A stretch of 63,603 nucleotides of DNA, the filler included, from Octopus bimaculoides (Eukaryota), in the NCBI RefSeq assembly GCF_001194135.2. It is 7 parts of 4 records of this genome, joined end to end, with 100 filler letters (N's around TTAATTAATTAA, not from the genome) between each part and the next. Parts side by side here need not be neighbours in the genome. Positions count along the whole stretch, not along the records: positions 55,576 to 61,436 come from NC_069005.1; 6 more parts are not named here. One strand, 5' to 3'. This document shows positions 56,628 to 58,789 of this stretch, one piece after another. The position numbers and the translations under genes are program-made. The notes under the pieces are model-generated. The model was given only the letters and a program-made list of their open reading frames with translations, made no database searches and was not told where the DNA came from. Each line of letters begins with the position of its first letter. Within the stretch, counting starts at the first letter, position 1.

Positions 56628-58789
56628 ATAAAGCGACCGTGACATCGTTCAAACCTAACCGCACATCCTAGAAATCGACCAACACATCGTACAAACCGGG
56701 AAAGATATCCTGGAAGCCAAGAGTGACATTGTGGAAAACGACCGAGTCATCGTACTCACCGACACAGACACCGCACATACCGAACAACATGTCGTAGAGT
56801 CCGCCCGAGACATCGTAGAAACCGACTGAGACCAGGTAGAAACCCAACCACACATCATAGAAGGCGACCAAGACATCAGAGAATCCTGAAAAGACCTTGT
56901 GGAAACCGATAGAGACATCGTAGAAAACGATTGAGACATCGCAGACATCGTAGATGCACATAGACATCGTACATACAGACACGGACATTGTAGAATCCGC
57001 GCGAGACATCGTAGAAAGCGGATGTGATGTTGAAACCGAACAGCACTCTTCGAGAAAGGTATCGTGGAAACCGACAAGAGACATCGCAGAAAACGACCGA
57101 GAAATCGTAAACACCGACATCATAGAATCCGGCCGAGACCTCGTAGAAAACTGCCGTGACATCGTTCAAAACCAACGACATATACTAGAAACCAACGAAG
57201 ACATCGTAGAAAACGAGACAGATGTCGTTGAAACCGATAGACATCGTAGAAAACGACTGGGACATCGTAGTCACCGACACAGACATCGTACATACCAGAA
57301 AGCGGCTATGACATTTTTCAAACTGAACCACTCATCCTCAAAACTGACCGAGATATCGTAGTAACCGGGGAAAGACATCGTAGAAACAGGCAGAGACATC
57401 GTAGAAAACGACAGACATCGTAGACACCGACACAGACATCGGACATACCGACCCGGACATCTTAGAATCTGGCCGAGACGTAATAGAAATCGAGTGAGAC
57501 CTCGTTGAAACCCAGCCTCACATCCAAAAATCAACCAAGACATCGTTGATACAGGGAAAGACATCGTGGAAACCGGTAGACACATCGTAGAAAACGACCG
57601 AGACATCGTAGACACCAGCACAGACGCCGTAGAATCCGGCCGAAATATCGTAGAAAATGGCTGCGACACCGTTCAAACCGAACCACACAACCTCGAAAAC
57701 ATATACAGGAAGACATCGTGGAAACCGGAAAGACAGCGTGGAAACATGGTAGAAAACTACCCAGAGTAGATACCGACACAGACATCGTACATATCGACAC
57801 AGACATCGTCGAAACCGGCTGAGATATCGTAGAAAGGGCCGTGACAATTGTTCAAAACGAACCACACATCTTAGAAATCGACCAAGACATCGTAGAAACC
57901 GGGAAAGGCATCGTGGGATCCGACTGACACATCGTAGAATACGACCGAGAAATCGTACATATCGACACAGACATCGTAGAATCCGGCCGAAACCTCGAAG
58001 AAACCGACCGAGACCGCGCTGAAATTCAACCACACATCCTAGAAACTGACCAAGCCATCGTAGAAACCGGGAAAGAAATCGTAACAAAGGAGAGAGACAT
58101 CGTAGAAAACGACCGAAACATCGTAAACACCGACGCAGAAATCATACATATCGATACAGACATCGTAGAATCCATCGGAGACATCGTAGAAAACAATCTT
58201 GGTCGGTTTATAGGATGTGTAGATCGGTTTGAACGATGCCACGGCCGCTTTCTATGATGACTGCCGGAGTCTAAGATTTCTCGGTTGGTATGTACAATGT
58301 CTGTGTTGGTGTCAACGATGTCTCGGTCGTTTTCTACGATGTCCCTGTCGATTTCCACGAAGTTGTAGTCGGTTTCTAGGATATGTGATTCGATTTTAAC
58401 GATGTCACGGCCGCTTTCTACGATGTCTTGGACGGTATGTACGATGTCTGTGTCGGTGTCTATGATGTCTCAGTCGTTTTCTACGTGGCGGTCCCGGTTT
58501 CTGCGATGTCTTGGTCAGTCTCTAGGGTTTGTAGTTCGGTTTGAACGATGTCACGGCCGTTTTCTACGATGTCTCAGACGGAGTCTACGATGTCTCAGAC
58601 GGAGTCTACGATGTCTCAGACGGAGTCTACGATGTCTCAGACGGAGTCTACGACGCCATTGTCTGTTTCCACGATGTCATTCACAGTTTCTTCGATGTCT
58701 TGGACGGTTTCTTTAAAGTGTGGTTCTATTTGAACGATGTCACAGCTGCTTTCTATGAAGTCTCAGCCGGATGTCACAGCCGCTTTCTA
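56628..58789. repeat. 21-bp-subunit higher-order tandem array (189-bp unit) with an internal inversion
   Basis: gacatcgtagaaaNNNNNNNN subunits. Landmark DIVQT subunits fall at 56641, 56830, ~57025, 57158, 57309, 57498, 57665, 57843 and 58013. + orientation to ~58195, then - orientation to 58789. Confidence 0.95.

What the first reader, a model, noticed from the sequence alone, without database searches (positions are those of the whole stretch)
58100..58789. The array flips tail-to-tail at ~58195: foldback-like palindrome
Seen: forward subunits end at ...gacatcgtagaaaaca (58195), and the next bases atcttggtcggtttataggatgtg are the reverse complement of the HILETDQ subunit. Arms are ~1560 bp and ~590 bp with essentially no spacer. 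Known: Drosophila FB foldback elements have long inverted arms built from short tandem subrepeats grouped into higher-order units. Inference: this may be a cephalopod foldback-type element, or an inversion from a fold-back/template-switch event. It could extrude a cruciform or yield long dsRNA (ADAR/siRNA substrate) if transcribed.
Basis: partly seen in the sequence, partly recalled or inferred. Interest (0 to 1): 0.75.

Follow-up and report, generated by a model that had tools for sequence, protein, structure and literature searches.

The report
Old minisatellite with one orientation switch
A decayed 2.2-kb array of 21-base repeats changes strand once, at 58195/58196; this is most likely an old rearrangement inside an ordinary non-coding tandem repeat, not a fresh palindrome or a demonstrated foldback transposon.

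Summary
A 21-bp-period array (consensus GACATCGTAGAAACCGACCGA) runs on the + strand from 56622 to 58195. The same family then runs on the - strand from 58196 to 58789, with no spacer. Both blocks share one higher-order repeat of about 170 bp (about 8 unit types in the same order), so they come from one array family.

It is not a palindrome in the strict sense. Higher-order copies are about 80% identical at aligned sites (68-70% counting gaps) whether compared within an arm or between arms. No mirror register stands out. The flip is therefore old, and a technical fold-back artefact, which would give near-identical arms, is excluded.

No frame stays open, and no related protein, Rfam family or metagenome copy was found.

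Foldback-transposon membership is not shown: there is no separate terminal domain and no in-register target-site duplication.

If transcribed through, the region would fold into a long imperfect hairpin (helices up to 25 bp). However, molluscs reportedly lack an endo-siRNA pathway, and A-to-I editing favours young repeats.

Verdict: an ordinary old tandem array with an internal inversion. Interest is low.

The parts
56622..58195 (+). Forward arm. About 74 units of a 21-bp minisatellite (GACATCGTAGAAACCGACCGA), grouped in 9 higher-order copies of 134-194 bp that start at 56641, 56830, 57024, 57158, 57310, 57498, 57665, 57844 and 58012. It ends inside unit type h, at base 16 of 21.
   Evidence: TRF; unit parse; self-BLAST offsets 189, 322, 517, 669, 857, 1024, 1203 and 1371; higher-order copy matrix.
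58196..58789 (-). Reverse arm. About 27 units of the same family on the - strand, forming three full higher-order copies (189, 146 and 166 bp) plus partial copies at both ends. Read in its own orientation it ends 3 nt into unit type c at the junction.
   Evidence: TRF; unit parse; BLAST against the forward arm at 67-71% in at least 8 registers.
58194..58197 (.). Strand-switch junction ...GTAGAAAACA|ATCTTGGTCGG..., placed to within about 2 nt. There is no spacer and no recognisable microhomology or local palindrome. Exact repeats that touch the junction are at most 18 nt long.
58196..58245 (-). The 50-nt asymmetry. Units b and a, plus parts of c and h, exist only on the reverse-arm side of the mirror axis (about 58220). 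They would form the loop of any hairpin.
   Evidence: DNA fold of 58046-58345, dG -62.9 kcal/mol, z -7.2; mirror alignment; pair-sum mode 116439-116441.
58565..58648 (-). Four perfectly identical 21-mers (own strand GACTCCGTCTGAGACATCGTA). This is a recent slippage expansion inside an otherwise 70-80% identical array.
58790..58928 (.). Flank marker: a MITE-like insertion with 29-nt terminal inverted repeats and a TA/TA duplication (58788-9 and 58929-30). It sits at the outer edge of the reverse arm and is younger than the array.
   Evidence: Inverted repeat 58788-58818 / 58900-58930, 94% complementary; self-hit on the minus strand.
58931..59095 (-). Flank: a SINE-like fragment whose 3' side is cut exactly at the array edge. 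I recognised it as a SINE from memory only.
   Evidence: Sequence. No tRNA by ARAGORN. No tool confirmed the family.

Best explanation
What it is:
- An old, non-coding 21-bp minisatellite. It first differentiated into about eight unit types and then amplified as a higher-order repeat of about 170 bp.
- Within this roughly 2.2-kb array one rearrangement turned the distal part onto the other strand. Two forms of that event fit: a two-break inversion with one break at 58195/58196, or an inverted duplication made soon after the higher-order repeat amplified.

What happened since:
- Both blocks have drifted neutrally by about 0.23 substitutions per site between any two copies.
- There has been occasional local slippage (four perfect units).
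- Later transposon insertions landed at the edge.

Function: I see no evidence that the structure does anything today. It is a passive scar that happens to be able to fold back.

Shown: the strand switch, the shared higher-order repeat, the equal divergence within and between arms, and the absence of coding capacity.

Inferred: that the flip arose in place and is real in the genome, and its age (tens of millions of years at typical neutral rates; the rate for this lineage is unknown to me).
For: - Perfect strand partition of units and the skew flip.
- Same unit types in the same order in both arms.
- Identity within and between arms is indistinguishable and star-like: FF 80.3 +/- 2.1%, RR 80.2%, FR 79.8 +/- 4.4%, against 65.8% for a wrong-orientation control.
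- At least 8 registers score 67-71%. Identity is not raised next to the junction: 74-78% near it against 62-76% further out.
- K2P distance is 0.23. The conserved core columns are kept in roughly 80-94% of units, which is about what drift alone predicts.
- No long ORF; 5 of 6 frames are stop-free in the consensus, so ORFs carry no weight here.
- No protein relatives.
- The contig is unique at k of 19 or more around the junction.
Against: - The junction is not verified by reads or by a second assembly.
- Both outer ends of the pair start with the same 20-nt motif (TAGA[T]AAGCGRCYGTGACATC). By my estimate two independent edges would fall in the same phase about 3% of the time (a +/-2-nt window in a 170-nt repeat). 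A simple in-place inversion does not predict this; a discrete element or a duplication that included the array's origin would.
- Un-inverting the distal block does not restore a seamless unit: h1-16 would be followed by h8-21, a 9-nt overlap. That requires staggered breaks or another mechanism.
- Inversion and inverted duplication cannot be told apart.
Confidence: 0.6

Rival explanations
1. A non-autonomous foldback-type transposon. The two inverted subrepeat arrays would be its long terminal inverted repeats, meeting without a middle domain. The unit would have inserted as a whole and then decayed.
For: - The arms are built of short tandem subrepeats grouped in higher-order units, as in FB, Tetris and Galileo (definition in PMC4079207).
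- Both outer ends begin with the same 20-nt motif in inverted orientation.
- The flanks share a TTGAC 5-mer.
Against: - The terminal motif is just the generic h-to-a unit transition, which is also found internally, and not a separate terminal domain.
- The terminal higher-order copies F1 and R1 are the least similar pair (69%).
- The 9 flanking bases taken in register match at 2 of 9, and the TTGAC copies are offset by 2 nt.
- The right flank is a cut SINE-like fragment whose other half is not on the left, so this is not a simple insertion.
- No transposase and no second copy were found in any searchable collection.
Confidence: 0.13
2. An assembly artefact: two array-bearing sequences of opposite orientation were joined wrongly inside one contig of a gapped short-read scaffold.
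For: - The piece comes from a scaffold with N gaps at 56213-56349 and 59166-59294.
- Repeats are error-prone in assembly.
- No read check was possible.
Against: - The arms differ by 20-30%, so a missed-adapter or amplification fold-back chimera, which gives near-perfect palindromes, is excluded.
- Exact repeats adjacent to the junction are at most 18 nt, and the junction 20-mers are unique in the contig. No local repeat could have led an assembler across.
- Unit phase and higher-order repeat type are coherent on both sides.
Confidence: 0.1
3. Two independent arrays of the same family, for example carried by two copies of a repeat-bearing mobile element as in bivalve Helentron- or MITE-borne satellites. 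They would have been brought tail-to-tail by nested insertion or by deletion of intervening DNA.
For: - Equal divergence within and between arms fits paralogous copies.
- The same outer-end motif fits two copies of one element.
- TE-borne short arrays in molluscs are mentioned in PMC4079207.
Against: - There is no trace of non-array element sequence at the junction.
- Nothing in the flanks is shared between the two sides.
- It needs two events where one suffices.
Confidence: 0.1
4. A functional hairpin-RNA locus. Read-through transcription would give a roughly 600-bp imperfect duplex that feeds ADAR editing or small-RNA production. The 21-bp period would phase the products.
For: - RNA MFE is -576 kcal/mol against -229 for the same-orientation control.
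- 417 of 452 predicted pairs are between the arms, with helices of 25, 21 and 18 bp.
- The unit length equals siRNA length.
Against: - No evidence of transcription could be obtained.
- The arms are only 70-80% complementary and show no sign of being kept paired.
- Molluscs, O. bimaculoides included, show no dedicated endo-siRNA pathway (PMC12479628).
- Editing falls with repeat divergence (PMC9989829).
- No Rfam family reaches its threshold.
Confidence: 0.03

Closest known systems
Orientation switches inside satellite arrays ('macro-dyad symmetries' of Tribolium TmSat1/TmSat2, PMC13081366; also strand switches or inversions in human alpha-satellite arrays)
   Same: One tandem-repeat family is present as a direct and an inverted sub-array that abut at a defined inversion site. 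A hairpin is predicted across the site.
   Different: - In Tribolium the arrays are kilobases to tens of kilobases long, are highly homogeneous and occur in thousands of copies, with inversion-site sequences conserved at 98% or more, in putative (peri)centromeres.
- Here there is a single 2.2-kb, 20-30% decayed minisatellite in TE-rich DNA.
- Recurrence and conservation of the inversion site could not be tested.
Foldback transposons (Drosophila FB; Tetris of D. virilis, PMC4079207; Galileo, PMC3573991)
   Same: Long inverted arms made of short tandem subrepeats with higher-order grouping. There is no coding capacity.
   Different: - Foldback elements have a distinct terminal (flanking) domain at both outer ends, 7-10-bp target-site duplications and multiple copies.
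- Here there is no separate terminal domain and no in-register duplication, and the arms are no more alike than internal copies.
- Copy number is unknown.
Fold-back inversions or inverted duplications with a short spacer (break-induced snap-back or template switch). I compare with this from my own knowledge; no paper was read for it.
   Same: A tail-to-tail junction with a short (50-nt) single-copy spacer around the symmetry axis.
   Different: - Such events start with identical arms in one mirror register.
- Here identity in that register (68% overall, 74-78% beside the junction) equals that of other registers.
- Any such event must therefore be about as old as the higher-order repeat amplification itself.
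Drosophila hpRNA loci (inverted-repeat endo-siRNA sources). I did not read these papers; my search only listed their titles and abstracts.
   Same: An inverted arrangement able to form a long hairpin RNA.
   Different: - From my own knowledge, not from the sources: functional hpRNA arms are highly complementary, transcribed and processed by a siRNA pathway.
- Here complementarity is low, transcription is untested, and the pathway is reported absent in molluscs.

Membership tests
Foldback (FB-type) transposon | Long inverted arms composed of short tandem subrepeats | tested here: met
   21-bp units in higher-order repeats of about 170 bp, in opposite orientation either side of 58195/58196.
Foldback (FB-type) transposon | A distinct terminal (flanking) domain shared, in inverted orientation, by both outer ends | tested here: not met
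   Both ends start with the same 20-nt motif, but it is the ordinary internal h-to-a transition. There is no inverted copy of the left flank anywhere in the piece. The terminal higher-order copies F1/R1 are only 69% identical. Caveat: the right side is disturbed by a MITE, a SINE-like fragment and an N gap.
Foldback (FB-type) transposon | Target-site duplication of 7-10 bp flanking the element | tested here: not met
   Left flank ATATTTGAC against right flank CATTGACCC (MITE removed) matches at 2 of 9 in register. Only an offset 5-mer, TTGAC, is shared. Decay could hide an old duplication.
Foldback (FB-type) transposon | Multiple dispersed copies with common termini (mobility) | not testable with these tools
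Protein, metagenome and exact-ORF look-ups found no second copy.
Tandem-repeat array with internal orientation switch (satellite 'dyad symmetry') | Head-to-tail units of one family on both sides, same higher-order structure, abutting at one inversion site | tested here: met
Tandem-repeat array with internal orientation switch (satellite 'dyad symmetry') | Recurrent, sequence-conserved inversion site across many arrays (Tribolium type) | not testable with these tools
   Only this one locus is available. The feature is described in PMC13081366.
Recent palindrome or fold-back duplication (including technical fold-back chimeras) | Near-identical arms in a single mirror register | tested here: not met
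   The mirror register scores 68% overall, the same as at least 7 other registers. Between-arm identity equals within-arm identity.
Hairpin-RNA (hpRNA) locus | Transcribed, highly complementary arms processed into small RNAs | tested here: inconclusive
   The fold is strong but the arms are 70-80% complementary. Transcription is untestable. The pathway is reported absent in molluscs.
Protein-coding heptad-repeat gene | An open reading frame through the repeat, and relatives among proteins | tested here: not met
   The longest ORF is 189 aa, and frames are broken by stops and indels. There were 0 hits. Only generic heptad-repeat proteins scored, 28-40% identity among those I retrieved, the best a sturgeon hypothetical protein flagged as contaminant.

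The most novel reading that the evidence does not exclude
The inverted pair is one decayed copy of a foldback-type mobile element. Its arms would consist entirely of 21-bp subrepeats ending in a common terminal motif, making it a kind of transposon I could not find described for cephalopods (0 papers). Its younger copies could be real sources of hairpin RNA.
Probability: 0.12. Interest if true: 0.45.

Novelty: new member of a known kind. Interest (0 to 1): 0.2.

Why it matters
As it stands it matters little. Strand switches inside tandem arrays are a familiar by-product of rearrangement in repetitive DNA. This one is small, old and shows no sign of being maintained.

It is useful as a caution: inverted arms made of repeats do not amount to a palindrome unless one mirror register is privileged.

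It would gain interest only if genome-wide searches showed many copies with the same termini, which would indicate a cephalopod foldback family, or if transcripts showed that such loci feed RNA editing in an animal famous for it.

Tried and rejected
There is no junction check, no depth-based copy number and no RNA evidence.
- Second copies through proteins: the array ORF 57518-58087(-) gave 0 hits. The junction-spanning ORFs 58026-58358(-) and 58039-58242(-) are not on record.
- The DIVE-frame ORF searched by HMMER against 1.84 billion representatives returned only unrelated heptad-repeat proteins (adhesins, a sturgeon hypothetical).
- Metagenome scans: 0 hits, then 11 hits. None of the 11 holds more than about four anchor matches. 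The two I read, L001 and L002, are short unrelated repeats.
- Sampling the genome through the neighbouring LINE-tail ORF failed. It gave only two unnamed ORFs on 673-bp contigs.
- Rfam: nothing reaches a gathering score. The sub-threshold hits are microsatellite or hairpin artefacts.
- Coding-repeat idea rejected.
- Selection on the core motif rejected. The conserved core columns are kept in roughly 80-94% of units, about what K2P 0.23 predicts.
- Methylation-type CpG decay is not seen: observed/expected 1.4-1.5, transitions fewer than transversions.
- A target-site duplication at the outer ends was considered and rejected as unconvincing.
- Literature: no paper was found on cephalopod foldback elements or octopus satellites.

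Full report
**Scope.** I worked only on the piece 55576-61436. The array lies in one gap-free contig, 56350-59165, between two N gaps.

**The observation.**
- Tandem Repeats Finder reports a period-21 array at 56630-58192 (74 copies, 60% matches). A second array at 58197-58712 has the exact reverse-complement consensus.
- A 10-nt anchor from the unit core (CATCGTAGAA, up to 2 mismatches) occurs 51 times on the + strand, all at or left of 58173. Its complement occurs 23 times, all at or right of 58208. There is not one exception.
- AT skew changes sign in the same 100 bases.
- The last forward unit is GACATCGTAGAAAACA, ending at 58195. The next bases are the reverse complement of a unit of the 'HILETDQ' type, matching it at 19 of 21 positions.
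- The arms measure 1574 and 594 bp with no spacer.

**Anatomy.**
- The 21-bp units fall into about eight recurring types. In one frame these read xIVQxEP, HILExDQ, DIVETGK, a variable unit, DIVENDR, DIVHxDT, DIVESGR and DIVExxR. They recur in the same order with a period of 134-194 bp.
- There are nine higher-order copies in the forward arm and three full ones in the reverse arm. The two arms share the same types in the same order, so they descend from one higher-order array.
- The forward arm stops at base 16 of type h. The reverse arm, read in its own direction, stops 3 nt into type c. The mirror axis therefore lies near 58220, and about 50 nt (58196-58245) have no partner.
- Four perfectly identical units at 58565-58648 show recent local slippage.

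**Is it a palindrome?** No.
- BLAST of the reverse arm against the forward arm gives at least eight registers at 67-71% identity. The mirror register gives 68%.
- With higher-order copies aligned one to one, identity at aligned sites is 80.3 +/- 2.1% forward-forward, 80.2% reverse-reverse and 79.8 +/- 4.4% forward-reverse. A wrong-orientation control gives 65.8%.
- Identity is not raised beside the junction: 74-78% there against 62-76% further out.
- The pattern is star-like. The reverse block is simply another set of old copies.
- This excludes a recent fold-back duplication. It also excludes the technical fold-back chimeras that give near-perfect palindromes.
- Exact repeats touching the junction are at most 18 nt, so no local repeat could have led an assembler across it.

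**Coding or RNA family?**
- No frame stays open. The longest ORF is 189 aa, and five of six frames are stop-free in the consensus, so ORFs carry no weight.
- A search with an array ORF found nothing.
- An exhaustive HMMER search with the DIVE-frame ORF found only unrelated heptad-repeat proteins, 28-40% identical among those I retrieved. The best is a sturgeon hypothetical protein flagged as contaminant.
- Rfam gives nothing at gathering score. ARAGORN finds no tRNA.

**Decay.**
- Kimura distance between higher-order copies is 0.23.
- The conserved core columns of the unit are kept in roughly 80-94% of units, which is about what that distance predicts without selection.
- CpG is not depleted (observed/expected 1.4-1.5), and transitions do not exceed transversions.

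**Foldback transposon?**
- Foldback elements are defined by long inverted arms that hold a terminal (flanking) domain, tandem repeats and an inner domain. These lie around a middle domain, with 8-10-bp target-site duplications and several copies (PMC4079207).
- The first feature, arms made of subrepeats, is met.
- A distinct terminal domain is not. The left flank has no inverted partner in the piece. The terminal higher-order copies are the least similar pair, at 69%.
- One point remains unexplained. Both outer ends begin with the same 20-nt motif: 56622 TAGATAAAGCGACCGTGACATC, and the reverse complement of 58770-58789, TAGAAAGCGGCTGTGACATC.
- That motif is the ordinary h-to-a transition, which is also found internally. 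Even so, two array edges falling at the same phase of a 170-nt repeat has a chance of only about 3%.
- The flanking bases do not form an in-register duplication (2 of 9). They share only an offset TTGAC.
- The right flank is a SINE-like fragment cut on its 3' side exactly at the array edge, and its other half is not on the left. This is therefore not a simple insertion.
- Copy number and mobility could not be tested. Protein look-ups, exact-ORF look-ups and two metagenome scans gave no second copy. An attempt to sample the genome through the neighbouring LINE-tail ORF returned only two 673-bp contigs.

**Folding.**
- As DNA, 58046-58345 folds at -62.9 kcal/mol (z = -7.2).
- As RNA, 57600-58789 folds at -576 kcal/mol, against -229 for the same sequences placed in one orientation.
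- In the closely similar fold of 57600-58791 (-580 kcal/mol), 417 of 452 pairs are between the arms, and the longest uninterrupted helices are 25, 21 and 18 bp.
- A read-through transcript would thus be a long, bulged hairpin.
- Whether this matters is doubtful. A survey of 32 molluscs including O. bimaculoides found no dedicated endo-siRNA pathway (PMC12479628). Across metazoans, editing density falls as repeats diverge (PMC9989829).
- DNA cruciform extrusion is unlikely with a roughly 50-nt unpaired centre and 20-30% mismatch. That is my inference from general knowledge of cruciform kinetics.

**Most likely history.**
- A 21-bp minisatellite differentiated into unit types and then amplified as a higher-order repeat of about 170 bp.
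- About that time or later, one rearrangement turned the distal part over. It has since decayed passively, with occasional slippage.
- A Tc1/mariner-type MITE then landed at its edge (TA duplication, 29-nt terminal repeats).
- I cannot separate a two-break inversion from an early inverted duplication. Un-inverting the distal block leaves a 9-nt overlap rather than a seamless unit. That fits staggered breaks but proves nothing.

**Comparison with the known.**
- The closest match in kind is the orientation switch inside satellite arrays. It is best documented as the 'macro-dyad symmetries' of Tribolium satellites, where direct and inverted sub-arrays meet at conserved inversion sites (PMC13081366).
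- That system is large, homogeneous, recurrent and (peri)centromeric. This locus is small, decayed and single as far as I can see.
- Foldback transposons resemble it in architecture, but two defining features failed here and one was untestable.
- I found no paper on cephalopod foldback elements or octopus satellites.

**Organism.** No tool named the organism.

**Verdict.** This is an ordinary old tandem array with one internal strand switch, of low interest (0.2). There is about a 12% chance that it is a decayed copy of an undescribed foldback-type element.

Noticed in passing
58788-58930: A MITE-like element of 139 bp (58790-58928) with 29-nt terminal inverted repeats (CAGGGTGTCCACAAGGTCTGGGTACA...). 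The arms are 94% complementary over 31 nt when the flanking TA is included. It is flanked by a TA/TA duplication, which is the Tc1/mariner insertion signature, and contains a 12-bp x2.3 internal repeat. It sits exactly at the outer edge of the reverse arm.
   Followed up: partly
58931-59095 (- strand): A SINE-like fragment whose 3' part is missing. The cut coincides with the array edge. The other half is not on the left side of the array. I recognised it from memory as an abundant octopus SINE; no tool confirmed this.
   Followed up: partly
56622-56643 and 58770-58789: Both outer ends of the inverted array pair begin with the same 20-nt motif (TAGA[T]AAGCGRCYGTGACATC) in inverted orientation. 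The chance of the same higher-order phase at two independent edges is about 3%. Unexplained.
   Followed up: partly
59848-60165 (+): A remnant of the C-terminal tail of a retrotransposon-like ORF (…FIPIIIGALGFVSKRLTAIPDRLGF…). It is broken upstream by stops. It is 72% and 62% identical to two unnamed ORFs on a 673-bp ENA contig.
   Followed up: partly
59349-59781, 60245-60337 and 60340-60560: (ACAC/ACAT)n microsatellites are followed by their complement (TGTG/TGTA)n. The strand flip lies at about 60338-60345, and the tracts flank the retrotransposon remnant. This produces most of the long 'inverted repeats' in the piece and the sub-threshold miRNA hits.
   Followed up: no
58565-58648: Four perfectly identical 21-mers inside an array whose other copies are 70-80% alike. 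This is a recent slippage, and the true copy number may be collapsed in a short-read assembly.
   Followed up: partly
56622-58789: CpG is not depleted in the array (observed/expected 1.4-1.5). The two main CpG columns are kept in 78-89% of units, and transitions are fewer than transversions. There is no sign of methylation-driven decay.
   Followed up: partly
55576-56122: (TCA)68 is followed on the same strand by purine-rich triplet runs ((AGT)20, (GAA)10 and mixed GGA/GGT tracts). These give long spurious ORFs in several frames.
   Followed up: no
60860-61436: A second SINE-like element with an internal CA/TA microsatellite. It ends at the edge of the piece. I recognised it from memory only.
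   Followed up: no
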